A DNA stretch of 64,000 nt, taken from NCBI RefSeq assembly GCF_963921235.1, contig NC_086124.1, positions 27,900,001 through 27,964,000 on the forward strand, written 5' to 3'. Made by a program: the position numbers and the translations under genes. The notes under the pieces were generated by a model. It was not told where the DNA came from, did no database searches, and saw nothing but the letters and a program-made list of their open reading frames with translations. Each line of letters starts with the position of its first letter. Position 1 is the first letter of the stretch. This document shows positions 2,161 through 64,000 of the stretch, one piece after another. The stretch comes from Mobula hypostoma (lineage: Eukaryota).

Positions 2161-2442
2161 CCCAAACTGCATGCAGCTTGTCAGGGACGCTCAAATGCTT
2201 GATTTCACAAGTGTAAGTGTCACCCTTCCCGGGGTCAATTTCGACCTGTAGCCGGACTTGGAACGTCCCATCCTGGTTGGGTAAAATTTTCGTCATTAGC
2301 ACTTCCCGATTGATCACTACACCATTCCGCAGCCACGTTGCGTGGATTTTCTTGGGATAAAATCCATGCACTTGGCATATCAGGGCCAAGGTATTCTCTC
2401 TGTTCTTCAGGTGTCTTGAGGTTATTGTGATAGTTGGCTTCG
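2161..2442 (-). CDS. WB: MHC W-category beta-chain-like gene, Ig C1-set (beta2) exon
   Basis: Acceptor ctgcag|CG at 2442 and donor TGG G|gtaag at 2161; 282 bp, phase 1/1. Translation: (A)KPTITITSRHLKNRENTLALICQVHGFYPKKIHATWLRNGVVINREVLMTKILPNQDGTFQVRLQVEIDPGKGDTYTCEIKHLSVPDKLHAVW. It has the C1-set LxCxVxGFYP, W and YTCxxxH motifs. LPNQDGTFQ is class I alpha3-like (P235/G239), not the class II beta NGDWTFQ. Confidence 0.85.
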
Positions 2443-2958
2443 CTGCAGTGGACAGAAACACATTGAAGCTGAACTTGGTTACAGGATCAGAAAAAGTAAA
2501 GAGTAACAGAATTTCAAAGTTCAAAGTATGTTTACTATTAAAGCATGTGTATATCATACAACCTTGAGATTACAGCATGACGAAATGGAGGAACAGACAC
2601 AATGGGTCGAATGGTCTAATTCTGTTCCTATGTTTATTCACCTCCCTAGATGCTGCCTGGCCTACTTAATGGTGCGCGCGCGCGTGCGCGTGTGTGTGCA
2701 TGCACGTGCATACACACGTTGCTTTGGATTGCCACCATCTGCCGAATCTTCTGTGTTTAGAAACTGTCCCCCGGTCATCTGCCTCTGACCAGGGGTAGGG
2801 TTCTTTCTGTCACTCCCAGGTCACATGAAAGTTTCAAGAACTGTTGGTAACCCAAAGTTTCCATAAGGTGGAAATACTTAGAAATAAAAATTTGCATGGT
2901 GAGGTTAATTAGCTACAGGTTAGTGCAGATCAGAATCAGGTCTAATATCACTGACATA

Positions 2959-3428
2959 CACTCAGTGTCCACTTTATTAGGTACACCTGCTCATTAATAT
3001 AAACCTCTTATCAGCCAATCATGTTCCAGCAACTCAATGCATAAAAGCATGCAGACGTTGTCAAGAGGTTCAGCTGTTGTTCAGACCAAACATCAGAATG
3101 GGGAAGAAATGCAATCTAATTAACTTTGACCATGGACCAGATGGGGTGGTCTGAGTATCTCAGAAACTGCTGATCTCCTGGGATTTTCATACACAACGGT
3201 CTCTAGAATTCACAGAGAACGGTGCGACAAAGAAAAAACATCCAATGAGCGGCAGTTTTGTGGGTGAAAGCACCTTGTTAATGAGAGAGGTCAGAGGAGG
3301 ATGGCCAGACTGGTTCAATCTGACAGGACGAGGATAGTAACTCAAATCACCATGTGTTACAGCAGTGGTGTGCAGAAGAGCATCTCTGAATGTACAACAT
3401 GTCACACCTCAAAGTGATTGAGCTACAG
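2959..3428 (+). mobile_element. Tc1-derived MITE, truncated by the Buster insertion
   Basis: TA then cactcagtgtccactttattaggtacacc terminus, followed by degenerate Tc1 transposase N-terminal sequence. Confidence 0.7.
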
Positions 3429-5745: not shown

Positions 5746-5746
5746 G

Positions 5747-8700: not shown

Positions 8701-10790
8701 CAGAGGAGGTGGAGAATTTAGATCGGGCTCTTGGGTAGGAAGAGATTAATAATGCCATTATGCCTATGCAGAGTGGTAAATCCCCAGATCCTGATGATGA
8801 TCTGATATAATTTTATAAGAAATTTAAGGTAAGCTCATACCGGTCCTTCTAGAAGTGTTTCAGGAATCTTTGGAGAATTGTTCCTTACCCCCTACTCTTT
8901 CACAGGCATCTATTTCACTTCTTCTTAAGAAGGACAAGGACCCGACTCAATGTGGATCATATCACCCCATCTCACTTTTGAATGTGGATGTGAAAATTTT
9001 GGATAAAGTGCTTGCATGTCGTTTAGAACATCCCCTTCCCAAGATAATCTCAGATGATCAAACAGGTTTTATTAAAAATTGCCATTCTTTTTTTAATATC
9101 CCTGGACTGGCTGATGTGGTTTATTCACCCAGTGATTCTCCAAGTCTGGAGGTTGTTATCTCCTTGGATGCGGAGAAGACATTTGATAGAGTGGAGTGGG
9201 TATACTTGTTTAGTGTTTTGGAGAAATTTGGATTTGGCAGAATATTTGTAGCCTGGGTTAAGCTATGATATCACTTGCCTTTAGTGTGTATACAGACAAA
9301 TTATTTTCGATCTGACTATTTCCCATTAACATGTGGCACTCACCAAGGCTGTCCATTGTCCCCTCCTCTTTTTGCAATTGCAATTGAGCCTCTTTCTATT
9401 GCACTTAAGTCAACAACATTATTTCAAGGTGTTAGGAGAGGCGACATAGAACACCGTGTATCCCTATATGCTGATGACCTCTTACTTTATGTTAGCGACC
9501 CTGCAGGTAGCTGTCCTGCTATTGTGTCATTATTAGGCCAATTTGGAGCCTTCTCTGGCTATAAACTGAACCTTCAAAAAAGCAAATGATTTCCCATTAA
9601 TAACTTGGCCCTACAGATCTGACAGGAATCCTTGCCTTTTCCTTTATCTCAAGATGGTTTTGTATACCTATGAATACATGTTACTCGCTCTTTTACATCT
9701 CTGTCTGAAGCTAACTACAGGCCTCAGGTTGGCCAAATGAAGGCTGATTTTGAGAGATGGCAGTTTACCCCTTACTATAGCTGGGAGAATTCAATCAGTG
9801 AAAATGACTATACTTTCCAGATTTCTTTATTTGTTCCAGTGCTTACCAGTTTTCTTATCTAAGTTATTTTTCAAATCAATCGACCAAGCTATAATCTCTT
9901 TTATTTGGGAAAATAAGGTCCCAAAGGTTAATAAGTGCACTCTCCAAAGAGGTCATGACGTAGGTGGAATGGGCCTTCCTAGCTTTGTTCATTATTATTG
10001 GGCATCGAACATTCAAAAAGTATTATTTTGGCTTCACCGGCCAGATATAATCTGGTGCCTGCTTGAGTCACGGTCTTGCCACTCCTCGTCTCTCCCAGCT
10101 TTGGTGTATTCTTCCTTACCATTGAAATCCTCTCAATTCACATCTAACTCGGTCGTGCTCTCCACCCTCAAAATTTTTAATCAATTTTGCTTCACTGTAA
10201 GTTCACATCAGCTTCAGTTTTGGGTCCCATTCATAGAAACCATCTATTTCTTCCCTCCACACTCGATTCATTTTTTAGACAATGGGGTTTGAACTGTCTT
10301 ATGCGCATTAAGGATTTGTACACTGATAACATATTGATAGTTTCGATAACCTGTGCAGTAAATATGGCCTTCTGCATAATCATTTTTTAAAACACCTGCA
10401 GATTCACCACTTTGTCAGGGAAAAATGTCCCTCTTTTCCTGATCTACCACTTGCTATGTTGTGGGGAAAAACTCACTCATAGCTTTAATAATAAAGGGCT
10501 GATCTCTGTACTATACTCTCAGCTGATGTCTTTGGGAGTTCAAGATCTAAACAAAACTAAAACTAGGTGGGAGGTTGATCTTGGTATGGATCTGGTTGAG
10601 GAATATTGGGCAAAAGCATTGAATAGGGTTCATTCCTCATCATCATGTGCTAGACTGGGGCTCATACAATTTAAAGTTTTACACAGGGTACATTTATGTA
10701 AAGCCAGCCTTGCTGACATATATCCTGGGACAGATGCTGGTTGTGACACATGGACTGTTCATAAATCTGATGGCAGAAGGGAAGAAACTT
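5747..10790 (+). mobile_element. Near full-length decayed L1-clade LINE (ORF1 ~5894-6738; ORF2 ~7384-10790)
   Basis: ORF1 pieces include DDLKNRLRRSNLRVVGIPE and FGLLYPAQL. ORF2 has the APE endonuclease ISWNVKGLNGPVKR, RT QGCPLSP and SLYADDLLLY, and a C-terminal QFKVLHR. Many stops and frameshifts. Confidence 0.9.
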
Positions 10791-10839
10791 TTCCTGAACC
10801 CTTGAGCGTATGCCTTCAGGCTCCTGTACCTCCTCCCTG

Positions 10840-11290
10840 AAGGTAGCACTGAGAAGAGGGCATGTCCTGTGTGGTGAGGGTCTTTGATGATGGATGATGC
10901 CTTTTTGAGGCATCACTCCTTGAAGATTCCTGAATGCTAAGGAGGCTCGTACCCATGATGGAACTGACTGAGTTCACAACTTTCTGCAGCTTCTTTCAAC
11001 CCTTTGCAGTATCTCCACCCCTCCCCCCATGTGCAGCCAGTTATACCTCTCCACGGTATATCTGTAGAAATTTGACATACCAAATCTCCTCAAACACGTA
11101 ATGAATATAGTCGCTGTCGTGCCTTTTTGTAACTGCCTCGACATGTAGGCCCCAGGATAGATCCTCAGAGACATTGATGTCTAATAACTTGAAATTGCTC
11201 ACTCACTCCACTTCTGATCCCTCTTTGAGGACTGGTGTGTGTGTTCCCTTGTTTTGCCCTCTCTGTCAGCCTCTGCCACACAGCCTACTT
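10840..11290 (-). mobile_element. Rex1/Babar-type LINE 3' fragment
   Basis: Reverse complement encodes the decayed IIKDPHHTGHALFSVLPSG-type terminus shared with the copies at 16.7, 35.4 and 50.3 kb. Confidence 0.6.
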
Positions 11291-11299
11291 GAACATCGC

Positions 11300-11812
11300 T
11301 TTGAAAACAAAACTTTAATTCCACTTCCCACTCCCATGCCATGGCCTCCTCTTCTGTCAGGATGAGGCCGCACTCAGGTTGGAGGAGTAACATCTTGTAT
11401 TCTGCCTGGGTAGCCTCCAACCTGTTTGCAGGACCACCGATTTCCCGAACTTCCAGTAATGCCCCCCTCCACTTCATCATTCCCCATTCCCTTTTCACTC
11501 TCTCACCTTACCTGCACATCACCTCCCTCTGGTGCTTCCCCCCTTTCTTTCTTCCATGCCCTTCTGTCCTCTCCTATCAGATTCCTCCTCCTCCAGCCCT
11601 GCACCTCTTTTCCCAATCAACTCCCCAGTTCCTTACTTCACCCCTCTCCACCTCCTAACTCTGACTCCTCAACTTGTTTCTCCAGTCCTGATGAAGGGTC
11701 TCAGCCCGAAACGTCGTCTCTACTCTTTTCCATAGATGCTGCCTGGCCTGCTGAGCTCCTCCAGCACTTCGTGTGTGCTGCTTGGATTTCCAGCATCTGC
11801 AGATTTTTTTGT
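11300..11812 (+). mobile_element. Penelope-like element 3' fragment (end of GIY-YIG region plus 3' terminal repeat)
   Basis: Homologous to 61100-61680 of the long Penelope copy (actcaggttggaggag, gggtagcctccaacctg, gatgctgcctggcctgctg). Confidence 0.75.
11683..11720 (+). ncRNA. Minimal type I hammerhead ribozyme motif with a damaged stem I
   Basis: cagtc CTGATGA agggtctcagccc GAAAC GTC gtctc. The catalytic core is intact; the 3' stem-I strand is mutated from gactg. Confidence 0.55.
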
Positions 11813-11826
11813 GAAAATAAACTTAC

Positions 11827-12084
11827 CCGTCAGAGCTTGAACAGCCTGGTGAACGATCTCCATGGCAAAAGGCATGTCATTAACATAGCGGGCAACATTT
11901 CTGATAAGCTTTTGATCGCGGTTCAGTTTGTCCACGAAAGACTTCACAAGTGGATTGATGGCCACAAACTTTCCTGTTGTATAATCAAAGCCAACAGCCA
12001 CTTCTCCATTGTAAGCAAACTGCAGGGTAGCCATTGAGAACTCCGAACCTTTACCAGAGAAAGTCACTTGACCGATGTGCATTC
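11827..12084 (-). CDS. WB: MHC W-category beta-chain-like gene, membrane-distal groove (beta1) exon
   Basis: Acceptor ccag|GA at 12084 and donor ACG G|gtaagt at 11827; 258 bp, phase 1/1. Translation: (G)MHIGQVTFSGKGSEFSMATLQFAYNGEVAVGFDYTTGKFVAINPLVKSFVDKLNRDQKLIRNVARYVNDMPFAMEIVHQAVQALT. GMHIGQ resembles class I alpha2 GSHTxQ, and QFAYNG resembles QYAYDG. Confidence 0.85.
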
Positions 12085-12219
12085 CTGGCAAGCGAATAAT
12101 AATAGATCCGTTAGCCATTTGTGAGAGTGAAATGGCTCATTTTAAAACCTTAAAATTAATCAAACTGAAAGAACAAATTTGTCTCTCCCTTCTGTGGAAA
12201 CCTCACCATTCTGACGGCA

Positions 12220-13220
12220 ACAGGTGCCACTCCTCCAGAACCACCTCTCCCTCCCACTGTAAAACTCCAATAGCTGGGATTTGGTGTTGGTACTGCTGAC
12301 CCTTCACCCTCACTCTCGGCACCCTCCTCTTCCCCAGTTCGATGCCCACGTCCCCACCCACCTCTTCGCCCAAACCCCTCCTCGCCATCGAATTGCCCTT
12401 CCCTCAACACCTCTCCCCACAGACATCTCTCCTCACCGTCCACACCCAACTCTCCACCCACCCCCTCTCTCCCTACCCACCCTCGGTGACTACTTCCCTC
12501 CCTCCGCAAACATCCTTGGCGGTCCCTCCCCACCCACTCACCCATAGCCCCCTCCCAATCTCAGTGCCCTGTATCCTCCCCACTCTCTGCACCCCCACAA
12601 CTCCACTCCTCAGCCCTCCGTCCCACCCTTAGCACCCCTCTCCCTCCCCACACACCTTTGGCACCCTAATTCCTTCCCCACACAACCATCCCCAGTGACC
12701 CCTCCTCTTCCACCACCCCCTCAACAATACTCAATCCACCTCCACTCCCTCCCTTCCTGCTTTCTCTCAGTGCATCCTTCCCTTCCCACGCCCGTTCTGT
12801 GCCCTCTCTCCTCTCCTTTGGAAGCCCCTCCTCTCCCATGGTGCCCACTCCAGTACTCTCCATTGGTGCCCCCTCCTCCCTACCTTCCCTTTGCACCCCC
12901 TTCCCACCCTCCTTTGGTGTTCACTCCCTACCCACCCTGCCTCAATGTCACTCCCCTCTCCTCCCCACCCTCCATCGGTACCCATTCCCCTCCCCTCCCC
13001 TCTTAACCCTCCCTCAGTTCCCCTCCCCACCCTCCCTTGGTGCTACTCTCTCCACCTTCCTTCAGCGAGGTCTCCCTTTCCCTCCTGACCTTTACCCTCC
13101 CCTCCCTCCCTCCCTAGTTGCCCTCTTCCCTCTCTTGCCCACCCTCCCTCAGTGTCCCCACCCCTCTCTACCTCCCTACGCTCCATCGGTGCCCCCTCCC
13201 ATCCCTGCTGCGCTGCGCTC
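12220..13220. repeat. ~1 kb C-rich low-complexity tract filling most of intron 1
   Basis: The plus strand is dominated by C and T runs, so it is G-rich on the gene's sense strand. It produces only spurious Pro-rich or Gly-rich ORFs. Confidence 0.85.
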
Positions 13221-13225
13221 CTCAC

Positions 13226-13370
13226 CCAGGGCAGTGGAGCCGTTGAGGAGGAGGAGGAAGGCGGCGAGCAGAGAGGGAGAGCGGCGTCGCCTCACGCCGG
13301 CCGGCGGCTCCTGAGACAGCGGGAGGAGCAGCTGGCTCACGGTTCGCGGAGACGGCATCATTCCCCACAT
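13226..13370 (-). CDS. WB: Leader (signal peptide) exon of the WB-like gene
   Basis: In-frame ATGs at 13370, 13361 and 13358. Translation: MWGMMPSPRTVSQLLLPLSQEPPAGVRRRRSPSLLAAFLLLLNGSTAL(G). The phase-1 donor CTG G|gtgag at 13226 joins in frame to the GA of the next exon. Lies in a CpG-rich segment. Confidence 0.8.
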
Positions 13371-22890: not shown

Positions 22891-24039
22891 TCTGCCTGGG
22901 ATCTGACACCGGACAATGCAGATAGCCACGAGTGCTCGTCCCAACTGGCCTATTTCTGAAGATCATCGCCACGGTGTTGGAAAGAGTTTTGAGCTGCAGG
23001 ATGAAAATTATTTGTAGTTCCATGAACACCAGAGCAGCACATACAGTAGTTGTGATCGGTGCAGACTCTGGACCTCACCCCAAACTGCACAGTCTCTCCA
23101 GGACACCCCTGTGCTCCAGTTGAGAAGTGTAGGTGCCCCCCTGCTGGGGTCAACGCTGAACATGAAGTCTGAGTTGGAATGTGTCAGTTTGGCAAAAGGC
23201 TGCTCCTGAACATCTCCTGCTCGATGGCTTCGCCATTCCGCAGCCACGCTGTGTTGACGTCCCTTAGGTAAAGTCCATCCACTCTGTACATCAGGACTGA
23301 GGGCTTTACTCCCACGTTCAGCTGTGTTAACGTTATGGTGATGGAACGTTTCACTGCAGTGGAGAGAAACCATAAGACACAGGAGCAGAATTAGATCATA
23401 CGGCCCATCGAGTCTGCTCTGCCTTTCCATCATGGCTGATTCATTAACCCTCTCAACTCCATTCTCCTGTCTTCTTCCCGGAACCTTTGATGCCATTACT
23501 AATCAAGAACCTAACAACCTCCACTTTAAATATACCCAATGACTTGACCTTCACAGCTGTTTGTGACAATGAATTTCACAAATTCACCACCCTCTGGCTG
23601 AAGAAATTCCTCCTCATCTCTGTTCTAAAGGGACACACTTCCATTCTGATGCAGTGCCTCAGAATTACTGAGAATGCTCAGTACAGGAGATGGAATATCA
23701 TGTTATAGCATATTGGTAAGGTCACCTCCATAGTGCTGAGGCTATGAAGACTGCCCCAGCTTTTGTGCTCCATGCCCGCTAACATGATAAACTGATAAAC
23801 CAGACTTTGGGCTGCTCCAGGGTTCGGATCTGAGGATCATTTTGGTTTGGAATGCTGCTGTCTGCATGACCTCTTTTTGCTTTCTCTTGCACATTGATTG
23901 TTGTTTTTTTCTTTAATAAGGTTCTTTCAGATTCCTTGCTTTGTGGCCACCTGTGAGCAAGCAAATCTCAATGTTGTTTAATTTTTACATTCTTTGATAA
24001 CAAATGCACTTGAATCTTGAATCAATGTACAGTTCTGGT

Positions 24040-24740
24040 TACTCTCCTGTAGGAAGAATTTTATTAAATGAATAAGGTGTAAACAGTATGTTACCAAGAC
24101 AAGAGATTATAAGAAACTGGATAGGCTGGGTCTATACCCTCTCAATTGTAGGAGTTTGAAAGGTGACCTTATAAACTTTTGAGGTTTATAAGATCACTCT
24201 TGGAATATTGTGTTCGGCTATGTTTGCTTCATTACAGGAAGGACATCGACACTTTAGAGAGGATGCAGATGAGATTTATCAGAATGTTGTCTGTTCTAGA
24301 GGGCATGTCTTATGAGGACAGCTTAAGCAAGCTAGGGTTTTTCTCTTTGGAGCAAATAAGATGAAAGTTGACTTCATAAAGGTGTAAAATGATAAGAGGT
24401 GTAAAATGATAAGAGGCATAGATCAAGTAGATAGCCAGAAACTCTTTCCCAAGGCCAAAATGCCTAATACAAGAGGGCATAATTTTAAGGTGATTGATGG
24501 GAAGAATGGTGGGAGGGAAGATGTCAGAGATAAGTTTTTACACAGAGTGGTGGGTGTGTGGAATGCACTACCGGGGTGGTGGTAGAGGCAGATACATTAG
24601 GGGCTTTTAAGAAACTCTTAAATAGGTACATGAATGATAGGAAAATGGAGCTCTAAGTGGGAGTGTAGAGGTAGATTGATTAGGAGTAGGTTTAAAGGTC
24701 TGCACAACATCTTGCGCCAGAGGGTCTGACTGTGCTGTAA
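24040..24740 (+). mobile_element. CR1 LINE 3' fragments
   Basis: RSLLEYCVRL...QMRFIRML...GMSYEDSLSKLGFFSLE followed by a CR1-type 3' UTR. Confidence 0.65.
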
Positions 24741-25779
24741 TATTCTGTGAAGTCATAAGGGACATAGAGAAGGTGAATACAATCTTTTTCTCCAGGTTGG
24801 GTAGAAGTGAGAGAGTGAGAAAGAAAGACTTATAAAGGACCTGAGGGGAAACTTGTTCCACACGAAGCCTTGTAGTTATTGGGAATGAGCTGGCAGAGGA
24901 ATATTTGAGGCAGGTATAGTTATGACATTTAAAAGGCCTTTGGGCCAGTAAAGATTAAATGATCTAAAGATTAGCCTCACTTGTCACATGTACATCGAAA
25001 CACATATCGAATCACAAACACAAGAGCTTCTTCGGATGCTGGAAATCCAGAGCAACACTTTGTGTGAACGATGATCACAGACTGAGGATTGCACGGCAGG
25101 CCTAGCCATGCTTTTGAAGCCTTCGTAACATTCCCACATGGATTGGAAAGGTTTAGAGCAGTGGTTCCCTTCCTGGGGTTCTCAGATGCCTTTGTTAATG
25201 GTAGGGGTCCATGGCATAAAACAATGTTGAGAACCCCTGGTTCAGAGGGACATGGACCAAATGCAGGTTTCTGTCCTGCTGTTTGAAGACCCTTGAATCG
25301 TTCCCTAGTTTGACAAGATGGGCTCTGGATCTCACCGTGGGCCTCTCCATGGCCTTACATCTTATTGTCTACCTACTTACACTCTGAAACTGTATCTCTT
25401 TGTTCTGTATTCTATTATTGTTTTATCCTCGTACTACCTCAATGCACAGTTGTAATGAAATGATCTGCATGGATGGCATGTACTGTACCTTCGTTAGGCT
25501 ATTCGCTCAGATTAATTCAGTTCAAGGTGGAAGATTATTTATCGTCATTCTTCAGTACACGAGTGTAAAGGAAAACAAAATGATTGTTATTTCCAGTCCA
25601 ACACAGCACAAAACAATACAATTAGAAGGCCAGTAAATATAAAAGCAATTCTATAAAACAGAATGTACAAGTGAGAGTTTGAGTGCAGCCATATATACTC
25701 AAGATTAGCTTATACACAGGGACTGATTGTATGTACACAAAGTGACAGTAGGTACAGGATTCTGTTATCCTCGGCTTCG

Positions 25780-26240
25780 TAAGTCCAGGGAAGACAATCT
25801 CCGGCCCCGCCAAACATGTGAGACTAAGTCACGAGCCCACCCCGAAACCCCCTGTTTGTGTGTAATTCGTTACCCTGTTACAAATGAGTGCTATGAAATT
25901 ACAGACAGTACAACGCATTCAGTTAAAAGATTTAGCTTTACAATTCTTAACTTGATGAAAGGGTTAGTAAAGAAAGAACAAAAAAAAAAGAAAAGGGCCC
26001 ATTTTTGTGAAGCAGTCTAATGTGCACAGGTTGGACTCTCGGTTTCCCCATCGGTGATCCTCCATCGATCACCCCGGGCTTTGTCGAATCACGGTCCTGC
26101 CCTGGGTCCAATCCTACAGCCTCTTCTCTCCCGCGTCTTGGCTCTTCATCTCTCTCTGACAAGAGCCCCAAGCCCAACCTTAGTATCCCTCACCAGAGAA
26201 ACCTCCCTTAATCCAACCATCCTAATTGGATGGCACACAA
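25780..26240. mobile_element. Probable solo-LTR-like fragment
   Basis: Shares acagacag...tttacaattctta-like blocks with the 44388-45020 element. The termini are not resolved. Confidence 0.35.
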
Positions 26241-27735
26241 TTCTCCTATTTCTTATCTTCAACAATCATCATCATCATCATCAGGTGCTGAGCCCAGTTT
26301 GAGCTTTGACTGCCGTGGCCCACACACTCCTGTTTCGGGTCAAGTGGATCAATTCATTGGTATTCATTTCCAGTTCTCTGGCTGCTGTCCCCATCATCAT
26401 TTGTCTTTGTCTTCCTCTTGCTTTCTTCCCCTCAATCTTTTCCATAATTACCGTGCATTCTAACTCCTCTTTCCTAATCATATGCCCAATGAAGTTACGT
26501 TGCCTTTTCATGATCTCATACATTATTTCTCTTTTTGTGCTTGCTGTGTTCATGACATCCTCGTTAGATATTTGTTTCATTCATGGCATTCTTTGCATCC
26601 TTCTCAAAAAATGCATCTCTGCTGCTTCAATTCATTTCCTCATGTTACTAGATATTGTCCAACATTCTGAGCCATATAACATAACTGGATAAACGTAACA
26701 TTTCAGTGCTCTGAGGTGGGTTGTCATGCCTAGTTTAGTATTGGTCAGTGTACTCTTTGTTCTCGTAAAGGTGTCTTTTGCCATCCCTATTCTTCTTTTG
26801 ATGTCCAAGTCACACCTGCCATCTGATGTCACCCAGCTTCCTAAGTAGCAAAAGTTCTTTACTTGTTTCATGTCTTCCCCATTTATTCTCAGCCTGCAGA
26901 TAGGATTCTACTTCTTTTTGGATATCGCCATACATTCTGTCTTTTTGCAATTGATAGATAGACCCATTTTTGCTTTTTCTTCAACAGTTATATCAATTAA
27001 GTTTTGTAGTTCTTCCTCCGTACTTGCAATTAACACAGTGTCATCTGCATATCTGAAATTATTGATGTTTTCACTGCCAACTTTGATTCCAAAGGTGTCT
27101 CTTATTTTTTGTAATATTGTTTCACTATACACATTAAATAAATCAGGAGAGAAAACACATCCTTGTCTAACGCCTCTCTTGATTTTCGTAAACTGACTCA
27201 CATCGCTATCTATTCTTATAGTGCAGTTCGTTCCCAGTACAGATTTCTGATTAAGCGGAGGTCTTTCGAATCTAGATCTAGAGTTTTCTGTAATATTTCA
27301 AATAACTTATTGTGCTTCATTTTATCAAATGCTTTTGTGTAGTCGATAAAACAAACGATCGTTTTGCACTTGAATAGCTTGTTCTGATAGTATCCTTAAT
27401 ATCAATATTGCATTTCTTGTGCCTTTGTCTTTCACAAAACCACATTGTTCTTTACCTATTTCAGCTTGTATCTTACTTTTAGCTCTTGTCATCAAAATTC
27501 TTAGAAGTATCTTGGTAATATGACTCATTAAACTTATGGTCCTATGTAATTCGCATTCTATTGCTCCAGGTTTCTTAGGAAGAGTGATAAATACTGATTT
27601 TTTCATCTCTTCTCAATTATTCCAGTCTCATAAATGTCATTGATTAAATCCGTAATTTTTCAATTCCATAATCTTCGAGGGAGATAATTTGTTTATTACT
27701 AATTCATCAGGACCTGCTGCCTTTCCTTTCTTCAT

Positions 27736-29879
27736 AGAAACCATAGAAAAACTACAGCACAGAAACAGGCCTTTTGGCCCTTTTTGCCTGTGCTGAACCA
27801 TTTTCTGCCTAGTCCCATTGACCTGCACATGGACCATATCCTCCATACACCTCCCATCCATGTATCTGTCCAATTTATTCTTAAATGTTAAAAAAGAACC
27901 CGCATTTACCACCTCGTCTGGCAGCTCATTCTATACTCCCACCACTCTCTGTGTGAAGAAGCCCCACCTAATGTTCCCTTTAAACTTTTCCCCCCTCACC
28001 CTTAACCCATGTCCTCTGTTTTTTTTTCTCCCCTTGCCTCAGTGGAAAAAGCCTGCTTGCATTCACTCTATCAATACCCATCATAATTTTATATACCTCT
28101 ATCAAATCTCCCCTCATTCTTCTACACTCCAGGGAATAAAGTCCTAACCTATTTAACCTTTCTCTGTAACTGAGTTTCTCAAGTCCTGGCAACATCCTTG
28201 TAAACCTTCTCTGCACTCTTTCAACCTTATTAATATCCTTCCTGTAATTTGGTGACCAAAACTGAACACAATACTCCAGAATCGGCCTCACCAATGTCTT
28301 ATACAACGTCATCATAACATTCCAGCTCTTATTCTCAATACTTTGATTAATAAAGGCCAATGTACCAAAAGCTCTCTTTATGACCCTATCTACCTGTGAC
28401 GCCACTTTTAGGGAATTTTGTATCTGTATTCCCAGATCCCTCTGTTCTACTGCACTCCTCAGTGCCTTACCATTTACCCTGTATGTTCTACCTTGGTTTG
28501 TCTTTCCAAAGTGCGATACCTCACACTTATCTGTATTAAACTCCACCTGCCATTTTTCAGCCCATTTTTCCAGCTGGTCCAAGTCCCTCTGCAGGCTCTG
28601 AAAACTTTCCTCACTGTCCACTACACTTCCAATCTTTGTATCATCAGCAAATTTGCTGATCCAATTTACCACATTATCATCCAGATCATTGATATAGATG
28701 ACAAATAACAATGGACCCAGCACTGATCCCTGTGGCACACCACTAGTCACAGGCCTCCACTCAGAGAAGCAATTCTCTACTACTACTCTTTGGCTTCTTC
28801 CATTGAGCCAATGTCTAATCCAGTTTACCACCTCTCCATGTATACCTAGTGACTGAATTTTCCTAACTAACCTCCCATGCGGGACCTTGTCAAAGGCCTT
28901 ACTGAAGTCCATGTAGACAACATCCACTGCCCTCCCTTCATCCACTTTCCTGGTAACCTCCTCAAAAAACTCCAGTATGACCTATCACACACAAAGCCAT
29001 CTTGACTCTCCCTAATAAGTCCCTGTCTATCCAAATGCTTGTAGATTCTGTCTCTTAGTACTCCCTCCAATAACTTACCCACTACCGACGTCAAACTTAC
29101 TGGCCTCTAATTTCCCGGATTACTTTTCAATCCTTTTTTAAACAATGGAACAACATGAGCCACTCTCCAATCCTCTGGCACCTCACCCATAGACACCGAC
29201 ATTTTAAATATATCTGCCAGGGCCCCTGCAATTTCAACACTAGTCTCCTTCAAGGTCCGAGGGAACACCCTGTCAGGTCCTGGGGATTTATCCACTTTAA
29301 TTTGCCTCAAGATAGCAAGCACCTCCTCCTTTTCAATCTGTACAGTTTCCATGATCTCACTACTTGTTTCCCTTAATTCCATAGACTTCATGCCAGTTTC
29401 CTTAGTAAATACAGACTCAAAAAAACCATTTAAGATCTCCCTCATTTCTTTTGGTTCCGCACATAGCCAACCACTCTGATCTTCAAGAGGACCAATTTTA
29501 TCCCTTACAATCCTTTTGCTCTTAATATACCTGTAAAAGCTCTTTGGATTATCCTTCACTTTGATTGCCAAGGCAACCTCATGTCTTCTTTTAGCCTTCC
29601 CGATTTCTTTCTTAAGTATTTTCTTGCACTTTTTATACTCCTCAAGCACCTTATTTACTCCCTGTTTCCTATACATGTCATACAACTCTCTCTTCTTCTT
29701 TATCAGAGTTGCAATATCCCTTGAGAACCAAGGTTTCTTATTCCTATTCACTTTGCCTTTAATCCTGACAGGAACATACAAGCTCTGCGCTCTCAAAATT
29801 TCTCCTTTGAAGGCTTCCTACTTACCGATCACACCCTTGCCAGAGAACAATCTGTCCCACTCCACGCTTTTTAGATCCT
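27736..29879 (-). mobile_element. 5'-truncated CR1 LINE inserted in the RTE
   Basis: 321-aa RT ORF at 27980-28945 ([32 protein letters not shown]) and a tttctatggtttctat tail. A 5-bp ttcat repeat lies at both junctions (27731-27735, 29880-29884). Confidence 0.9.
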
Positions 29880-30927
29880 TTCATCTTATTTATTGCATTA
29901 CAACCTTCAGATTTTAAAATACTTGGACCTTCAATGTTCTTCTTAATTTCTGGTTTTTCACCTCGATCGTCTTCAAACAATTCCTGAATATACTCAGTTC
30001 ATAATCTGTTCATAATCTCATCTTTTTCCATGATAATGGTACCGTCCTTTGTTTTCAAACATCCACCTGAAGAACAGAGGAGCTTTTTACCAGTGATATT
30101 CTTGATTTGTTGATGTAACCTTTTTGAATCAGTGATAAGGATTCTTTCCATTTGCTCACATTCCTGATTTAACCATTCTTCTTGGCTTTTTGACATAAGC
30201 TTTTAACTTCTTTATCTAAGGACTTATATTCATAGGATTTGCTTTTTACCATCTCCTTTCTTCCATTAGATTTTTGATTTCATCTGTCATCTATTTATTC
30301 TTTGTGCTTTTTTTCTTTTTTGGGAATCACTGACTTTCCTGATTCTACCAAGGCATCCTTTAGAGAGTTAAATTTCATTTCTACATGATTGCTATCATCT
30401 TCAACAGATCCTATTTCTAGACTTTGAAATCTATTCCTTACTTCAATTGTAAATTTTTGTCTTAAGTTTACTTCTTTAATTAATTGCAAGTAGCCAAGGG
30501 ATTGTACAAGTTTTTGCTTGTTTAGTTTTTTAAGTTTTACTTTTACATGACATACTACTGGGTTATGGTCTCTGTTACAGTCTGCACCTGGATATGTTTT
30601 GCATTGAGTCACTGAGTTTCTAAATCTTTGGTTTATAGTAATAAAGTCAATTTGATTTCTAGTGTTATCACCTGGACTTTTCCAGTTCCACAAATGTCTT
30701 GGATGGTTTTTAAAGTAGGTGTTCATAATGACCTGATTATTCATCTTGCACCATTCTACCCATTTGTCACCTCTTTCACTTCTTTCCCCTAGTCCAAATT
30801 TTCCTATGGTATTTCCATCAGCACCTTGTCCTACTTTAGCATTTAGATCTCTCATGACAATAACAATATCTTGCTTGTTCAAGCTCTTCATAGAATTTAT
30901 CTATATCCTCATTTGTTCCATCTGTTG

Positions 30928-33266
30928 TTGAGCAATGAGGAAGGGTTAATTAGCAATCTTGTCGTGAGAGGACCCTTGGGTAAGAGTGACCATAATATGG
31001 TGGAATTCTTCATTAAGATGGAGAGTGACATAGTTAATTCAGAAACAAAGGTTCTGAACTTAAGGAAGGTTAATTTTGAAGGTATGAGACGTGAATTAGC
31101 TAAGATAGACTGGCAAACGACACTTAAAGGGTTGACGGTGGATATGCAATGGCAAGCATTTAAAGATCGCATGGACGAACTACAACAATTGTTCATCCTA
31201 GTTTCACAAAAGAATAAATCAGGGAAGGTAGTGCACCCATGGCTGACATGGGAAATTAGGGATAGTATCAATTCCAAAGAAGAAGCACACAAATTAGCCA
31301 GAAAAAGTGGCTCACCTGAGGACTGGGAGAAATTCAGAGTCCAGTGAGGAGGACAAAGGGCTTAATTAGGAAAGGGAAAGAAAATTATGAGAGAAAACTG
31401 GCAGGGAACATAAAAAGTGACTGTAAAAGCTTCTATAGATATGTGAAAAGAAAAGGATTGGTTAAGACCAATGTAGGTCCCCTACAGACAGAAACAGGTG
31501 AATTGATTATGGGGAGCAAGGACATGGCAGACCAATTGAATAAGTACTTTGGTTCTGTCTTCACTAAGGAGGACATAAATAATCTTCTGGAAATAGTAGG
31601 GGACAGAGGGTCCAGTGAGATGGAGGAACTGAGGGAAATACATGTTAGTAGGGAAGTGGTTTTAGGTAAATTGAAGGAATTAATGGTAGATAAATCCCCA
31701 GGGCCAGATGGTCTGCATCCCAGAGTGCTTAAGGAAGTAGCCCAAGAAATTAGTGATAATTTTTCAGAACTCTTTGGATTCTGGACTAGTTCCTGAGGAT
31801 TGGAGGGTGGTTAATGTAACCCCACTTTTTAAAAAAAGGAAGGAGAGAGAAACCGGGGAATTATAGACCAGTTAGCCTAACATCAGTGGTGGGGAAAATG
31901 CTAGAGTCAGTTATCAAAGATGTGATAACAGCACGTTTGGAAAGCAGTGAAATCATCAGACAAAGTCAGCATGGATTTGTGAAAGGAAAATCATGTCTGA
32001 CGAATCTCATAGAATTTTTTGAAGATGTAACTAGTAGAGTGGATAGGGGAGAACCAGTGGATGTGGAATATTTGAATTTTCAAAAGGCTTTTGACAAGGT
32101 CCCACACAGGAGATTAGTGTGCAAACTTAAAGCACACGGTATTGGGAGTAAGGTATTGATGTGGATAGAGAATTGGTTGGCAGATGGGAAGCAAAGAGTG
32201 GGAATAAACGGGACCTTTTCAGAATGGCAGGCAGTGACTAGTGGGGTACCGCAAGGCTCAGTGCTGGGACCCCAATTGTTTACAATATATATTAATGATT
32301 TAGATGAGGGAATTAAATGCAGCATCTCCAAGTTTGTGGATGACACGAAGCTGGGCGGCAGTGTTAGCTGTGAGGAAGATGCTAAGAGGATGCAGGGTGA
32401 CTTGGATAGGTTAGGTGAGTGGGCAAATTCATGGCAGATGCAATTTAATGTGGATAAATGTGAGGTTATCCACTTTGGTGGCAAAGACAGGAAAACAGAT
32501 TATTATTTGAATGGTGGCCGATTAGGAAAAGGGGAGGTGCAACGAAACCTGGGTGTCATTATACACCAGTCATTGAAAGTGGGCATGCAGGTACAGCAGG
32601 CGGTGAAAAAGGCAAATGGTATGCTGGCATTTATAGCAAGAGGATTTGAGTACAGGAGCAGGGAGGTACTACTGCAGTTGTACAAGGCCTTGGTGAGACC
32701 ACACCTGGAGTATTGTGTGCAGTTTTGGTCCCCTAATCTGAGGAAAGACATCCTTGCCATAGAGGGAGTGCAAAGAAGGTTCACCAGATTGATTCCTGGG
32801 ATGGCAGGACTTTCATATGATGAAAGACTGGATCGACTAGGCTTATACTCATTGGAATTTAGAAGACTGAGGGGGGATCTTATTGAAACGTATAAAATCC
32901 TAAAGGGATTGCACAGGCTAGATGCAGGAAGATTGTTCCCGATGTTGGGGAAGTCCAGAACGAAGGGTCACAGTTTGAGGATAAAGGGGAAGCCTTTTAG
33001 GACCGAGATGAGGAAAAACTTCTTCACACAGAGAGTGGTGAATCTGTGGAATTCTCTGCCACAGAAACAGTTGAGGCCAGTTCATTGGCTATATTTAAAA
33101 GGGAGTTAGATATGGGCCTTGTAGCTAAAGGGGTCAGGGGGTATGGAGGGAAGGCTGGTACAGGGTTCTGAGTTGGATGATCAGCCATGGTCATACTGAA
33201 TGGCGGTGCAGGCTCGAAGGGCTGAATGGCCTACTACTGCACCTATTTTCTATGTTTCTATGCTTC
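30928..33266 (+). mobile_element. 5'-truncated young CR1 LINE inserted in the RTE
   Basis: 407-aa RT ORF at 31886-33109 and a tttctatgtttctatgcttct tail. Highly similar to 55330-57684. Confidence 0.9.
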
Positions 33267-35389
33267 TATACCTGTATAATTGCTAAATCAAATGGTTGTC
33301 CTCTGAATCTAACAAGGAGCACTCTTTCTGATATTGCCCAATGTCCTAAATCACTTTTTAACCATGTTTTCATTCATAAGAATTCCTACTCCATTAGTAT
33401 GGGATGTTCCACAAGAATAAATTAGTGTTTTATTTCTATTCTGACATGTTCCAGCACCTATCCAATGAACTTTGCTAATTCTCATGTTGTTAATCTTTAG
33501 TCTTTCCATTTCACTTATCACATTGTCCAATCTTCCTGCTTGATATAGGGTTCTGACATTCCAAGTGGCAATAATTTTATTTTGCGTTACTTGAATTTTA
33601 TGAGCAGTAGCTTGATGACGGTCGGGGATCCCCTGCTGACCAGAATCAACCCTACCGAGCGAAGCATCTTAGACTTGTCTTGAAGATCCTCTTGACACTG
33701 TTGTTGTGTGATACATTTTGTGAGTTGGACCATGGTTTTCTTAGCAAATAGATTCTAGCAAACCTAGTATCTAGCAACAGTGGTTTGCTATTGCCTACCG
33801 TTGGGCGAACTAAAGAAATCGCCATTTCTCCTCCCAAATGTTCATCCACCTGTACTATAGCCATTGACATCTTCAACAATAAACCAAACATAAGCTGAAA
33901 ACAAGCAGCTCACACAGAAGAGCACAAAATGAAATACAAAACAGCATAACAGTAAAAAAATACGAACCAGGGCATTACATGTACATAAGGTGACTGACAG
34001 GAACAAGGCCTGTTCCCGAGCTGGGTGACTCTGATGGACAGCATAGTCATGATGGGCCACAGGGTCTGCTCCTATGCTGACTGACCTTATTGTGTCAGTG
34101 CACAGACGGTGGGGACACTGTCAGCCACACCCTATTCATCCTTGGTCATCCAGTACGGAGGGGCAGGGAGAAAGGCTGATGCCCCAGTTAATCTGCTCCT
34201 GGTAGCTGGGTAAGATAATTACCTGTGGGTTTTGGAGGTGGGTAGTGGAGGGTTCTGACCAAGCTGATTACCTGGCAATGTTTGAGGGAGAGGGGGATGC
34301 CCGTGCCTGGGCAGATGTGGAAAAATAACATGCACAGTGACGATGGGTAGTACAGAGGTACTTCGAGACCTTTGGGCACTCTGGGGGGTTGGGGCTAAAT
34401 TCTATCCTCGATGAGGATAGGAATGTGTTAGCTTAATCTGTATTAGTCATAATTTGCCCGTTTACGTTTGTAATGCAGTGTATCAGAGCACTGCAGTGGT
34501 TTGAATTGAGAATAAATGTAATTTTGTAAATAGACTGGTGGGGGCGCTGTTGTCAGCAATTTGCCTTGCATTTGTAGAGTTGGCTTCATAACTTCAACAT
34601 AACTTCCATGATGTTAATGATGTAGACAGCTCGGCGTTCAGGATCAGAACTTCCTTGGTACGGTTGACTTCAAAGACAGGGTTTGTGGTGGTTCAGGCCA
34701 CTGATAAAGTCTTCCAACAGTGGAATACGGGCCAGAAATTTCCTGACAGAGAAATCAAAATAGGTGATGTCTTTGCCAATGTAACCAAATCGCAGGCCCG
34801 TTTCTGAGAACCACAGAGCTGTGTAGGAGTCGACTGTCTTCCCTGATGAACACAATTGAGAAGAAGGATAGTTGAAGAGTCGTCTCAAGGGTAGGGTGTG
34901 TTGCGAATGAATTGCATGAAACATGGTGATTTCAATCTTCTGAGTTGCAGGTTCCACCTGACTATAAGTTACAATTTCAATCCATTTGCTCCCATGCTAG
35001 ACAACACACTTGTTAGACCACACTTACGTTGACTGTGTGACTATCAGAAATGGCTGAGAGTATTGGATACAACAAAGTTTACGGGAGCAGAAGCCACCCC
35101 AGCTGTAGTACTGTAGACCAGAGCTAGGCATGCCCCTAATGAATAGTGGGGAGAAGCAAAGGGATCTTGGGGCTCACACCCATAGATCGCTCATGTTTGG
35201 TAGGACGAGTTATCAGATCAGGTTTAATACCACTGGCATATGTCATGTAAATTGTTGATTTGTTGTTTTGTGGCAGCAGTACAATGCAATTATTGACATA
35301 TAAAACTATGAATCACAATAAGAAGGACATATAGAATTAAATAAGTAGTGCAAAAAGAGAGGGAAAATTTCTGAGGTGGTGTTCATGGG

Positions 35390-52480: not shown

Positions 52481-52491
52481 CTCACCTGCAC

Positions 52492-53025: not shown

Positions 53026-53039
53026 TGTGATTGGTCTCA

Positions 53040-62439: not shown

Positions 62440-62645
62440 TCATCCTTCTACAGTATGGGAGTCCCAGTGAATATGTGCAAAGTTAAAACCTTATGTTTCT
62501 TGCAATAGCCTATGACCTCTCTACAGATTTGTTCCTCTGCATCCCTCGGACTGTTGGGTGGTCTGTAATATAGTCCTATTATCGTGGTCAGACCTTTCTC
62601 ATTTCTCAGTTCCACCCACAACACCTCACCAGATGAGTTCTCCAG
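62440..62645 (-). mobile_element. CR1 endonuclease fragment
   Basis: EVLWVELRNEKGLTTIIGLYYRPPNS is the typical CR1 EN segment. Confidence 0.75.
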
Positions 62646-62928
62646 TGAAGCCAATCCCGAGACCGGCGAGTCGGCACCTGTCAGAGACTGCGCGTGCGCT
62701 CGTCATCCGGCCGCCCGCCGCTGATTGGCTGCCGCGGCTTCCCGCCAGAGACCCCCCCCGCCCTCTCTCCGGCGCGTGACTCCGCCGGCGGCCGGGCTGC
62801 TCCCTCGCTCTATTCGGCGTTGAGGAGCGGAGGAGCGGGGCTGGGACTGGGGCTGGGGCGGTACGTTGGGCGGGGAGGTTGCCTCCTCCTGCCTCCAGCC
62901 GCTCTTTGCTTTTGGCACAGTCGCAACC
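62646..62928 (+). promoter_or_regulatory. CpG-island promoter with CRE/X2-like half site, Y (inverted CCAAT) box, NRF1-like site and GC boxes
   Basis: tgcgcgtgcgc at 62689-62699, CGTCATC at 62701-62707, CTGATTGG at 62721-62728, a second CCAAT at ~62651 and ggggcgg near 62856. Confidence 0.65.
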
Positions 62929-63004
62929 ATGGGTCGATATTGCACTGCCTGGGCGCTCCTCCTGCTCCTCGCCGCTCGTTTGGGGACTCGCAGCTCGGCG
63001 GCCG
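62929..63004 (+). CDS. Signal-peptide first exon of an unidentified secretory/membrane gene (candidate WA partner)
   Basis: Strong Kozak context gcaaccATGG. Translation MGRYCTAWALLLLLAARLGTRSSAA(G), with a phase-1 donor GCC G|gtgagt at 63004/63005. Confidence 0.75.
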
Positions 63005-63154
63005 GTGAGTCGATTCCTGTCGCGGGGATCACCGCGCTTGGTGCAGATTGTGGGATCCTGCACAGTTCGCATTGCTGGGGTCATCAACCGGGTCGGGGGT
63101 GGGGTGTTATGGGTTGGATCTTGTTGTTTAAGGGTTAAACTTCCTGGTAAGACC

Positions 63155-64000
63155 TGTCACGTATCCCGTGATGGGAATAAAGAACCAGCAGAAATAGAAA
63201 ACGCTTTGGAGTCCAGTATTACTATTCACTAGTAATATTTATTAGAAACTACTCAATACAGTAATATAAATGTAGATAAATCAAACAGGTTAGCAATGAT
63301 TATTTATGTAAATAAGTATATCAGTAAGTGTGGAGATATAGGTGAAAAACCAAGCTTCTTCAAGTCTAAGGGTAAAAAGATACTGTCTTACGATGATGAG
63401 TAAAGTTCAGTTCAGATCATGGTGTTCAGTTGAGTAGTGATGGAGAGAGAGGGAGGGAGAGAATTGGGTCTTCAGGTGAGCTGACACCGTTGATCTCCTC
63501 GTTGTCCTCCGAAATCCTTTAAAGTCACAGACTGTGACTTCAACAAAGGGGACCAGTTTTCTGTGGTGGAGCTATCACCCAGGCAAGGGTGGACACATGG
63601 CCAACTCCCCACCGGTCACTGCCTTTTCTTTTCACTGCAGGAGCCACTGATCGATCTGCCTGATCGATCCTCCAAAAACCCACTTTTTCTGCCGGCATTA
63701 CAAAGCTCATTCAGTGTCCAAAACACATGTCTGAGGTCTATATCATCTGACCTTCTATTTATCTCACTGTACTGAGTATCAACTGTTATTCAAGTTACTC
63801 CCCCTTCCCTTCTCTGTGTAAGAAATGCAAGCAGGCAAATGTCTTTGAGAAGTATCAACATGCTGCTGAAAAATCATAACATTGATTGTCCATCAAATAA
63901 GGCTGCCTTCAGTCACCATAGCAACTTACGAGCTGCTTGGTGCCATCTCCAACTCAGCAGAAATCCAAAAGTTAGCCAGTTCTTTCTCGTGCCTTAAAGT
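63155..64000. mobile_element. LTR related to the 39188 solo LTR, running off the window
   Basis: Starts tgtcacgtatcccgtgatggg..aaagaaccagcagaaat..ggagtc, matching tgttacgtaccccataatggg..aaagaaccagcagaaat..ggagtc. Both also share gataaatcaaacaggttagc and ataacattgattgtccatcaaataa-like blocks. Confidence 0.75.

What the first reader, a model, noticed from the sequence alone, without database searches (positions are those of the whole stretch)
62929..63010. Divergently transcribed signal-peptide exon: candidate alpha-chain (WA) partner
Seen: a CpG island, a perfect Kozak ATG, a 25-aa hydrophobic leader and a phase-1 GTGAGT donor, pointing away from the WB-like gene. No other host gene lies between them. 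Established: MHC leader exons end in phase 1, and WA/WB genes occur as linked pairs. Inference: the two form a head-to-head alpha/beta pair. The leader alone cannot identify the gene.
Basis: inference. Interest (0 to 1): 0.72.

Follow-up and report, generated by a model that had tools for sequence, protein, structure and literature searches.

The report
Ray MHC W-alpha gene's first exon
The rest of that gene does not follow directly, though: two scavenger-receptor (SRCR) exons lie in between, and no RNA from the exon has been seen.

Summary
A CpG island (62501-63200) contains a Kozak ATG at 62929, a 25-codon signal peptide and a phase-1 GTGAGT donor at 63005-63010. It is the only such exon on either strand of the window.

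Stingray W-category alpha chains of the DS10-like lineage start MGRYPAAWALLLLL. They match 62902-63003, including 27 bases of 5'UTR, at 22 of 34 residues (tblastn E 2e-7; 0 of 2000 shuffles reach the score).

The divergent beta gene in the window is WB_DS1-like. In sharks that lineage pairs head-to-head with WA_DS10-like genes.

It is not a simple pair:
- The genome is Mobula hypostoma.
- The two ATGs are 49.6 kb apart.
- A broken WB pseudogene and transposons lie between them.
- NCBI annotates nothing at this exon. The next coding sequence on this strand starts 11.2 kb downstream and encodes 473 aa (SRCR, SRCR, C1-set), ending where the WA gene ends.

Three probable RNA runs show no reads on the exon, although one of them holds the WB exon.

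My odds:
- Signal-peptide exon feeding the SRCR(-WA) unit: about 0.45.
- Stranded duplicate: about 0.35.
- True WA exon 1 with a long intron: about 0.12.

The scan noted the same stretch in an overlapping window (s1-141921, s1-142437).

The parts
62501..63200 (.). CpG island around the exon; presumed promoter
   Evidence: GC 0.67-0.70 and CpG observed/expected 0.89-0.95, against 0.38 for the window. No TATA box. GC boxes at 62856 and 62868. Unique sequence: zero depth in runs whose repeat-derived contigs pile up on both flanks.
62651..62728 (+). CCAAT (62651), half-CRE CGTCA (62701) and inverted CCAAT CTGATTGG (62721-62728) upstream of the exon
   Evidence: and direct reading. The 15-base CGTCA-to-CTGATTGG spacing equals the X2-Y spacing I recall for HLA-DRA (from memory, not a tool result). 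No RFX/X1 half-site lies next to it, so this is not a demonstrated SXY module.
62902..62928 (+). Last 27 bases of the 5'UTR, conserved with stingray WA genes
   Evidence: This stretch translates to LFAFGTVAT; P0033 and P0034 have LFAFGTVSA (7 of 9). It is part of the tblastn hit 62902-63003.
62929..63004 (+). Coding part of exon 1: 25-codon signal peptide plus the first base of codon 26
   Evidence: MGRYCTAWALLLLL against MGRYPAAWALLLLL of P0032-P0034.
63005..63010 (+). Splice donor GTGAGT, phase 1
   Evidence: with coordinates recounted.
63156..64000 (.). Start of the intron: interspersed repeats, no exon
   Evidence: Many short contigs, mostly 95-99% alike, at depths of hundreds to thousands. 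No SRCR or MHC motif in any frame.
2162..13370 (-). Divergent partner: intact WB_DS1-like gene. Leader 13223-13370, beta1 about 11827-12084, beta2 2162-2443; the membrane and tail exons lie before the window's start.
   Evidence: P0002 (XP_062891132.1, Mobula hypostoma) matches at 100%. DS1-like by comparison with Dataset S2 fragments.
23090..34879 (-). Broken WB_DS1-like pseudogene lying between the WB gene and the leader
   Evidence: Beta1 relic 34673-34879: E 3e-8 against the WB beta1 and 41% to P0013. Beta2 relic 23090-23363: frameshift near 23187, an in-frame stop, and both Ig cysteines replaced.

Best explanation
The stretch is exon 1 of a W-category MHC alpha-chain gene of the DS10-like lineage. 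It comprises a CpG-island promoter, a 5'UTR, a signal peptide that sends the chain into the ER, and a phase-1 donor. It lies head-to-head with WB_DS1-like genes, the same pairing as in sharks.

In Mobula hypostoma the alpha-chain body does not follow within a few kilobases, as it would in a stingray-sized gene (10.6-10.7 kb from leader to stop). The next coding sequence on this strand starts 11.2 kb downstream. It is modelled by NCBI as one 473-aa product with SRCR, SRCR and C1-set domains, and it ends where the WA gene ends, 45.4 kb from this ATG.

I think it most likely that this exon is the 5' exon of that unit. Leader, SRCR, alpha1 and alpha2 exons are usually all phase 1, so the leader can splice in frame to the SRCR exons. 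That would give a signal peptide to an SRCR-SRCR product, with or without the WA part.

Shown: the exon's anatomy, its homology to stingray WA exon 1, the lineage of the WB partner, and the positions and domain content of the neighbouring gene models.

Inferred: that the exon is spliced to the SRCR exons, and that the product is made at all.

Odds: WA exon 1 by descent, about 0.9. Currently used as the 5' exon of the SRCR(-WA) unit, about 0.45.
For: Anatomy:
- Only leader-like exon in 128 kb of sequence (both strands), against 0.05 expected.
- First ATG, with an upstream in-frame stop.
- Strongest CpG island in the window.

Homology:
- P0032 (Hemitrygon akajei), P0033 (H. akajei) and P0034 (Hypanus sabinus) carry MGRYPAAWALLLLL.
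- tblastn of these proteins against the whole window hits 62902-63003 with 22 of 34 identities, E 1.7e-7 to 2.2e-7.
- Smith-Waterman score 101 against 25 +/- 5 for shuffles, 0 of 2000 reaching it. WB leaders and skate WA leaders show no similarity.
- The three proteins are WA_DS10-like: 32-33 of 44 identical to the little skate WA_DS10-like Ig fragment, against 11-14 to the DS5-like fragments. Pfam finds C1-set only.

Partner:
- The window's WB is DS1-like: 24-25 of 41, against 14 of 39 for DS3 and 14 of 33 for Nds5L.
- Sharks pair WA_DS10L with WB_DS1L head-to-head.

Downstream:
- I anchored the NCBI gene list of GCA_963921235.1 on the WB ATG at 13370. This puts a 473-aa SRCR, SRCR, C1-set gene at window positions 74185-108340 on the plus strand, with no annotated gene between 13370 and 74185.
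- The end, 108340, equals the end of the WA gene in two first-stage notes, which checks the mapping.
- 25 (leader) + about 209 (two SRCR exons) + about 239 (stingray WA without its leader) is about 473.
Against: - No RNA support. Runs X1-X3 have zero depth over 62670-63101. X3 holds 0.96 of the WB beta2 exon's sampled words but 0.00 of the leader's.
- NCBI's longest product starts at 74185 and leaves this exon out.
- Stingray WA genes span only 10.6-10.7 kb from leader to stop. The WA body therefore probably has its own leader near 96.9 kb, which would make this one a spare.
- The last 11 residues of the leader differ from the stingray sequence (3 of 11 identical), as relaxed constraint would allow.
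- The WB paralogs of this cluster share a 49-residue leader that matches the window 49 of 49. If that reflects recent duplication, a young dead copy could still look perfect and keep its CpGs.
- I could not read any base beyond 64000.
Confidence: 0.45

Rival explanations
1. Stranded duplicate. The exon and its promoter are a copy (or the displaced original) of a WA 5' end that is no longer joined to any mature mRNA. The working WA gene uses its own leader about 34 kb downstream. The copy survives because it is young, or it acts only as a promoter or enhancer.
For: - Zero RNA depth in three runs, one of which expresses WB.
- Left out of the NCBI model.
- Stingray WA genes measure 10.6-10.7 kb, which matches the 11.4-kb 'intact' WA gene noted downstream.
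- A WB pseudogene next to it shows that this part of the cluster holds decayed duplicates.
- WB paralogs share a leader that matches the window 49 of 49, which fits recent duplication.
Against: - ATG, Kozak context, open frame, donor and CpG island are all intact. The neighbouring WB pseudogene, by contrast, has a stop, a frameshift and lost cysteines.
- GC-rich first exons are often missing from short-read contigs.
- Only three small runs were laid on the exon.
Confidence: 0.35
2. True exon 1 of the WA gene. This is the only (or the main) leader of the alpha gene whose body ends at 108340. Intron 1 has grown to about 34 kb through transposons and two captured SRCR exons, which are normally skipped.
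For: - The lineage fits: a DS10-type leader opposite a DS1-type WB.
- Same strand, with no other annotated gene in between.
- The searches that found stingray and skate WA proteins found no plain WA protein of Mobula.
Against: - The downstream WA gene was read by another first-stage reader as intact over 11.4 kb, the size of a whole stingray WA gene including its leader.
- No RNA covers this exon.
Confidence: 0.12
3. Leader of an unrelated gene. The exon is the native signal-peptide exon of an SRCR gene, or of another secreted protein, and its likeness to WA leaders is chance.
For: - SRCR exons follow it.
- Elsewhere on this chromosome a 2164-aa multi-SRCR gene sits head-to-head with a WB paralog, 7.7 kb apart.
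Against: - 19 of the first 23 aligned residues, including 7 of 9 positions translated from the 5'UTR, are identical to stingray WA proteins.
- None of 2000 shuffles reaches the score.
- It is the best hit of those proteins' N-termini anywhere in the window.
Confidence: 0.04
4. Chance open reading frame in a GC-rich island.
For: GC-rich DNA has few stop codons, so short open frames are common there.
Against: Composite features are expected 0.05 times per window, and the exon is conserved across species.
Confidence: 0.01

Closest known systems
Stingray WA_DS10-like genes (P0032 and P0033 of Hemitrygon akajei, P0034 of Hypanus sabinus; NCBI names them 'class II ... alpha chain-like' or 'uncharacterized protein')
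   Same: The leader begins MGRY..AWALLLLL, and the 27 bases before the ATG are conserved. If the exon boundaries correspond, the stingray leader exon is also 25 codons long.
   Different: The stingray genes run 10.6-10.7 kb from leader to stop, with no neighbour within 10 kb and no SRCR domain. Here the alpha body ends 45.4 kb away and SRCR exons intervene. The last 11 leader residues differ.
Shark WA_DS10L/WB_DS1L head-to-head pair (great white shark 285-kb contig; Okamura et al. 2021, PMC8713811)
   Same: The same two lineages, facing away from each other.
   Different: That paper describes plain WA and WB genes and mentions no SRCR anywhere in its text or supplements. Here a WB pseudogene, transposons and two SRCR exons are interposed.
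Classical MHC class II alpha/beta gene pairs (for example HLA-DRA and DRB)
   Same: A leader exon ending in phase 1, paired alpha and beta genes, and a CCAAT/Y-type box upstream.
   Different: No X1 (RFX) box was found next to the Y-like box. W-category alpha chains have a beta-2-microglobulin-like Ig domain (PMC8713811).
NCBI model of 473 aa with SRCR, SRCR and C1-set domains in Mobula hypostoma (window positions 74185-108340)
   Same: Same strand, immediately downstream. Its length fits leader + two SRCR domains + a leaderless WA chain.
   Different: Its coding range starts 11.2 kb after this exon, so it does not contain it. I could not obtain its sequence.

Membership tests
W-category MHC alpha chain (WA) gene | Sequence homology to established WA chains | tested here: met
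   The leader plus 27 bases of 5'UTR match stingray WA_DS10-like proteins (22 of 34, E 2e-7, 0 of 2000 shuffles). Those proteins are 32-33 of 44 identical to the published little skate WA_DS10-like Ig fragment.
W-category MHC alpha chain (WA) gene | Class II-type architecture: leader, alpha1, beta-2-microglobulin-like alpha2 (C1-set), then connecting, membrane and tail parts | tested here: inconclusive
   Only exon 1 lies in the window. The public gene list shows a C1-set domain in the next gene model on the same strand, but after two SRCR domains. No DNA beyond 64000 could be read.
W-category MHC alpha chain (WA) gene | Head-to-head linkage with a WB gene | tested here: met
   The WB_DS1-like gene on the minus strand has its ATG at 13370; this exon is on the plus strand at 62929. 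The two are 49.6 kb apart, with a WB pseudogene in between.
W-category MHC alpha chain (WA) gene | W-type contact residues in alpha2 (equivalents of beta-2-microglobulin F56, W60 and W95) | not testable with these tools
   The alpha2 exon lies outside the window and its DNA could not be fetched (searches returned no DNA).
W-category MHC alpha chain (WA) gene | Transcribed together with WB, and paired with it at the protein level | tested here: not met
   Zero depth on the exon in X1-X3. X3 holds 0.96 of the WB beta2 exon's words and 0.00 of the leader's. The sample is small and the runs are only guessed to be RNA. Protein pairing cannot be tested here.
MHC class II-type SXY promoter | S, X1 (RFX), X2 (CRE-like) and Y (CCAAT) boxes at fixed spacing | tested here: not met
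   A Y-like CTGATTGG (62721) and a half-CRE CGTCA (62701) lie 15 bases apart. No RFX half-site adjoins them, the only GTTGCY lies at 62878, and I could not identify an S box.
SRCR-superfamily gene (leader of) | Leader followed by phase-1 SRCR exons and homologous to SRCR-gene leaders | not testable with these tools
   The SRCR domains are known only from the Pfam list of the neighbouring model. There is no SRCR exon in the window. The 473-aa and 2164-aa proteins could not be retrieved.

The most novel reading that the evidence does not exclude
This WA-type promoter and leader drive an in-frame leader-SRCR-SRCR-alpha1-alpha2-membrane transcript. The devil ray would then make an MHC W-category alpha chain carrying two scavenger-receptor domains at its tip, able to pair with WB. 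In the paper library I searched, no paper holds both SRCR and W-category or W-type MHC.
Probability: 0.2. Interest if true: 0.8.

Novelty: new member of a known kind. Interest (0 to 1): 0.5.

Why it matters
W-category MHC molecules were described only in 2021 and their function is unknown. This result does four things.

- It places one of their alpha-gene starts in a manta-family ray.
- It shows that the shark DS10/DS1 head-to-head pairing extends to rays.
- It shows that exon 1, and even part of its 5'UTR, is conserved between devil rays and stingrays.
- It marks the 5' boundary of a locus where two SRCR exons sit between a WA leader and a WA body.

If the leader, the SRCR exons and the WA body are spliced together, the product would be a clear case of exon shuffling between an innate pattern-recognition domain and an MHC chain. 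If they are not, the exon is a dated marker of how the cluster was duplicated and broken up.

Tried and rejected
- Exact look-up of the two read-through ORFs that contain the leader (69 and 90 aa): not on record.
- phmmer of the leader against 1.84 billion representative proteins: only a tandem-repeat artefact, P0001. The real relatives were missed, presumably because they are not cluster representatives.
- Profile of WB plus the leader (A1): found only WB, class I and class II chains. The leader columns were split and mixed, so the blank means little.
- Profile A2: WB P0010 plus three short WA fragments copied from Dataset S2 and S3 of PMC8713811. It found the stingray and skate WA proteins, but not the 473-aa Mobula protein.
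- Reads: three runs laid on 62400-64000 gave no depth on the exon, no joint and no loose end at 63004.
- Fetching DNA beyond the window through the public assemblies: every place came back without DNA because the files are too large.
- Scan of the window for SRCR motifs: none.
- Search for a second copy of the promoter and leader inside the window: none.
- The PDF alignments of WA leaders in the 2021 paper's supplement are machine-read and repeat rows, so I did not use them.
- Other reading frames of the exon's 3' half do not restore the stingray sequence VPCSGSAYS (read by eye), so a simple frameshift does not explain the divergence.

Full report
**What is there.** The window is vertebrate DNA. 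A 100% match of its Ig exon to XP_062891132.1 identifies the genome as Mobula hypostoma, assembly GCA_963921235.1.

At 62929 an ATG sits in the context caaccATGg. It opens 25 codons, MGRYCTAWALLLLLAARLGTRSSAA, plus one base, and is followed by GTGAGT at 63005-63010. So the coding part ends at 63004, in phase 1. It is the first ATG after 62633, and an in-frame stop lies at 62821.

The exon lies in the strongest CpG island of the window, 62501-63200. Its GC is 0.67-0.70 and its CpG observed/expected is 0.89-0.95, against 0.38 overall.

I ran a composite scan for a Kozak ATG, a short open frame, a hydrophobic core and a consensus donor. It finds this site and no other on either strand. Locally shuffled sequence gives 0.05 such sites per window.

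**What it is.** The leader turned out to be identifiable. I built a profile from a WB protein plus three short WA fragments copied from the datasets of Okamura et al. 2021. It retrieved alpha-chain-like proteins of skates and stingrays.

- Three of them carry the same start: P0032 and P0033 of Hemitrygon akajei and P0034 of Hypanus sabinus. P0032 begins MGRYPAAWALLLLLVPCSGSAYSVAE. P0033 and P0034 carry the same sequence after a 20-residue extension that ends LFAFGTVSA.
- tblastn of these proteins against all six frames of the window hits exactly 62902-63003, with 22 of 34 identities and E about 2e-7.
- The Smith-Waterman score is 101, against 25 +/- 5 for 2000 shuffles, none of which reaches it.
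- WB leaders and skate WA leaders score at background.
- The match includes 27 bases upstream of the ATG, so the exon itself is conserved, not only its hydrophobic character.
- The three stingray proteins belong to the DS10-like WA lineage. They are 32-33 of 44 identical to the little skate WA_DS10-like Ig fragment, against 11-14 to the DS5-like fragments. Pfam sees a C1-set domain only.

**The partner.** The divergent gene in the window runs on the minus strand. Its leader ATG is at 13370, beta1 at about 11827-12084 and beta2 at 2162-2443. It is WB_DS1-like: 24-25 of 41 identities, against 14 of 39 for DS3 and 14 of 33 for Nds5L. In sharks, WA_DS10L and WB_DS1L form one of three head-to-head pairs (PMC8713811).

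**Why it is not a simple pair.** Three facts complicate the picture.

1. The two start codons are 49,559 bases apart.
2. A WB_DS1-like pseudogene lies between them on the minus strand. Its beta1 relic is at 34673-34879. Its beta2 relic, at 23090-23363, has a frameshift, an in-frame stop and both Ig cysteines replaced.
3. The stretch from about 52000 to 62650 is mostly transposon-derived. It includes a LINE reverse transcriptase at 55006-57588 and a Penelope-like element with reverse transcriptase and GIY-YIG domains at 59317-61258.

**What lies downstream.** The window ends 990 bases after the donor, and those bases are repeats. No tool returned DNA beyond the window. The public gene list around the WB gene could be read, however.

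- I anchored that list on the WB ATG (locus position 254519 = window position 13370).
- It then places a gene for a 473-aa product, with Pfam SRCR, SRCR and C1-set, at window positions 74185-108340 on the plus strand.
- A further WB gene, P0010, lies tail-to-tail 4.6 kb beyond it.
- No gene is annotated between 13370 and 74185.
- The derived end, 108340, is the end that two first-stage notes on the overlapping window give for the WA gene. This confirms the mapping independently.

So the next coding exons after this leader are SRCR exons, followed by a WA body.

The arithmetic fits an in-frame chain: 25 (leader) + about 209 (two SRCR exons) + about 239 (a stingray WA without its leader) is about 473. 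Leader, SRCR, alpha1 and alpha2 exons are typically all phase 1 (established knowledge of Ig-superfamily and group B SRCR genes).

NCBI's coding range nevertheless starts 11.2 kb after this exon and does not include it.

**Is it used?** I found no evidence that it is.

- Three runs of the same species have zero depth over 62670-63101, with no joint and no loose end at 63004.
- As a control, the WB beta2 exon is held at 0.96, 0.79 and 0.67 of its sampled words by runs X3, X4 and X5 of the same study. These runs are only 86-170 Mb of contigs, so they are most likely RNA.
- X3 holds none of the leader's words.
- GC-rich first exons are often lost from short-read contigs and only a few tissues are sampled, so this is weak negative evidence.
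- Stingray WA genes span 10.6-10.7 kb from leader to stop. That is close to the 11.4 kb another reader gave for the 'intact' WA gene downstream, which suggests that gene has its own leader.
- The WB paralogs of this cluster share a 49-residue leader that matches the window 49 of 49. If that reflects recent duplication, a young unused copy could still look perfect.

**Verdict on mechanism.** That this is WA_DS10-type exon 1 by descent: about 0.9. For its present role:

- About 0.45: it is the signal-peptide exon of the downstream SRCR-SRCR unit, with or without the WA part.
- About 0.35: it is a stranded duplicate.
- About 0.12: it is the true exon 1 of the WA gene, with a greatly expanded first intron.
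- About 0.05: everything else.

**Promoter.** Upstream elements are a CCAAT at 62651, a half-CRE at 62701 and CTGATTGG at 62721. The 15-base CRE-to-Y spacing matches what I recall for class II promoters (from memory). No RFX site adjoins them, so I do not call this an SXY module.

**Novelty.** W-category genes and their head-to-head pairing are already known. This exon is a new member in a ray. SRCR exons between a WA leader and a WA body are not mentioned in the 2021 paper or in the 2023 elasmobranch MHC survey. No paper in the library holds both SRCR and W-category or W-type MHC. In Hemitrygon the alpha-like neighbour of the orthologous WB has no SRCR hit. Whether the Mobula fusion is a real protein or an annotation chain remains open.

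**Earlier notes.** The scan noted the same stretch in an overlapping window as 'duplicated W-alpha promoter and leader fused to SRCR exons' (s1-141921) and as a 'possible SRCR-SRCR-WA read-through' (s1-142437). I used these as leads. The WA nature of the leader and the domain order of the neighbouring model are confirmed here. The word 'duplicated' and the splicing itself are not.

Noticed in passing
window 23090-23363 and 34673-34879, minus strand: A WB_DS1-like pseudogene. The beta2 relic has a frameshift, a stop codon and both Ig cysteines replaced. The beta1 relic is cut short. No leader exon for it was found.
   Followed up: partly
Public gene list around the window; window 2162-13370: NCBI joins two WB paralogs, 88% identical, into one 279-kb 'gene' with isoforms X1-X4. 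X1 and X2 carry an extra 29-residue cytoplasmic exon. The last coding exon of the window's WB lies about 21.3 kb before the window's start.
   Followed up: partly
Elsewhere on the same 37.5-Mb record: A 2164-aa multi-SRCR gene sits head-to-head, 7.7 kb away, with another WB paralog (P0026). SRCR and W genes are thus neighbours at two places on this chromosome, and that gene is a possible source of the SRCR exons near this leader.
   Followed up: no
window 13224-13370, minus strand: The first 49 residues of P0005, P0006 and P0026 match this WB leader exon 49 of 49. P0006's gene maps about 220 kb away by the gene list. This means very recent duplication or gene conversion, or gene models that borrow one exon.
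   Followed up: no
P0033 and P0034 (stingray WA models): Both models start at an upstream ATG, which adds 20 residues before MGRY. Mobula has no ATG there and has an in-frame stop at 62821. P0032 starts at MGRY. The extension is probably an annotation artefact over a conserved 5'UTR.
   Followed up: partly
window 59317-61258 (plus strand) and 55006-57588 (plus strand): A Penelope-like element with long open frames, a reverse transcriptase domain and a GIY-YIG domain. It is CpG-rich, so probably young. Beside it lies a LINE with endonuclease and reverse transcriptase domains.
   Followed up: partly
window 16051-16350, 17401-17750 and 41751-42050: Three further short CpG-rich stretches with no recognised exon. 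Two of them lie 3-4 kb upstream of the WB start.
   Followed up: no
Hemitrygon akajei locus of P0012: The tail-to-tail neighbour of the stingray WB ortholog is a 182-aa C1-set product without SRCR hits. In Mobula the neighbour at the corresponding place is the 473-aa SRCR, SRCR, C1-set product.
   Followed up: no
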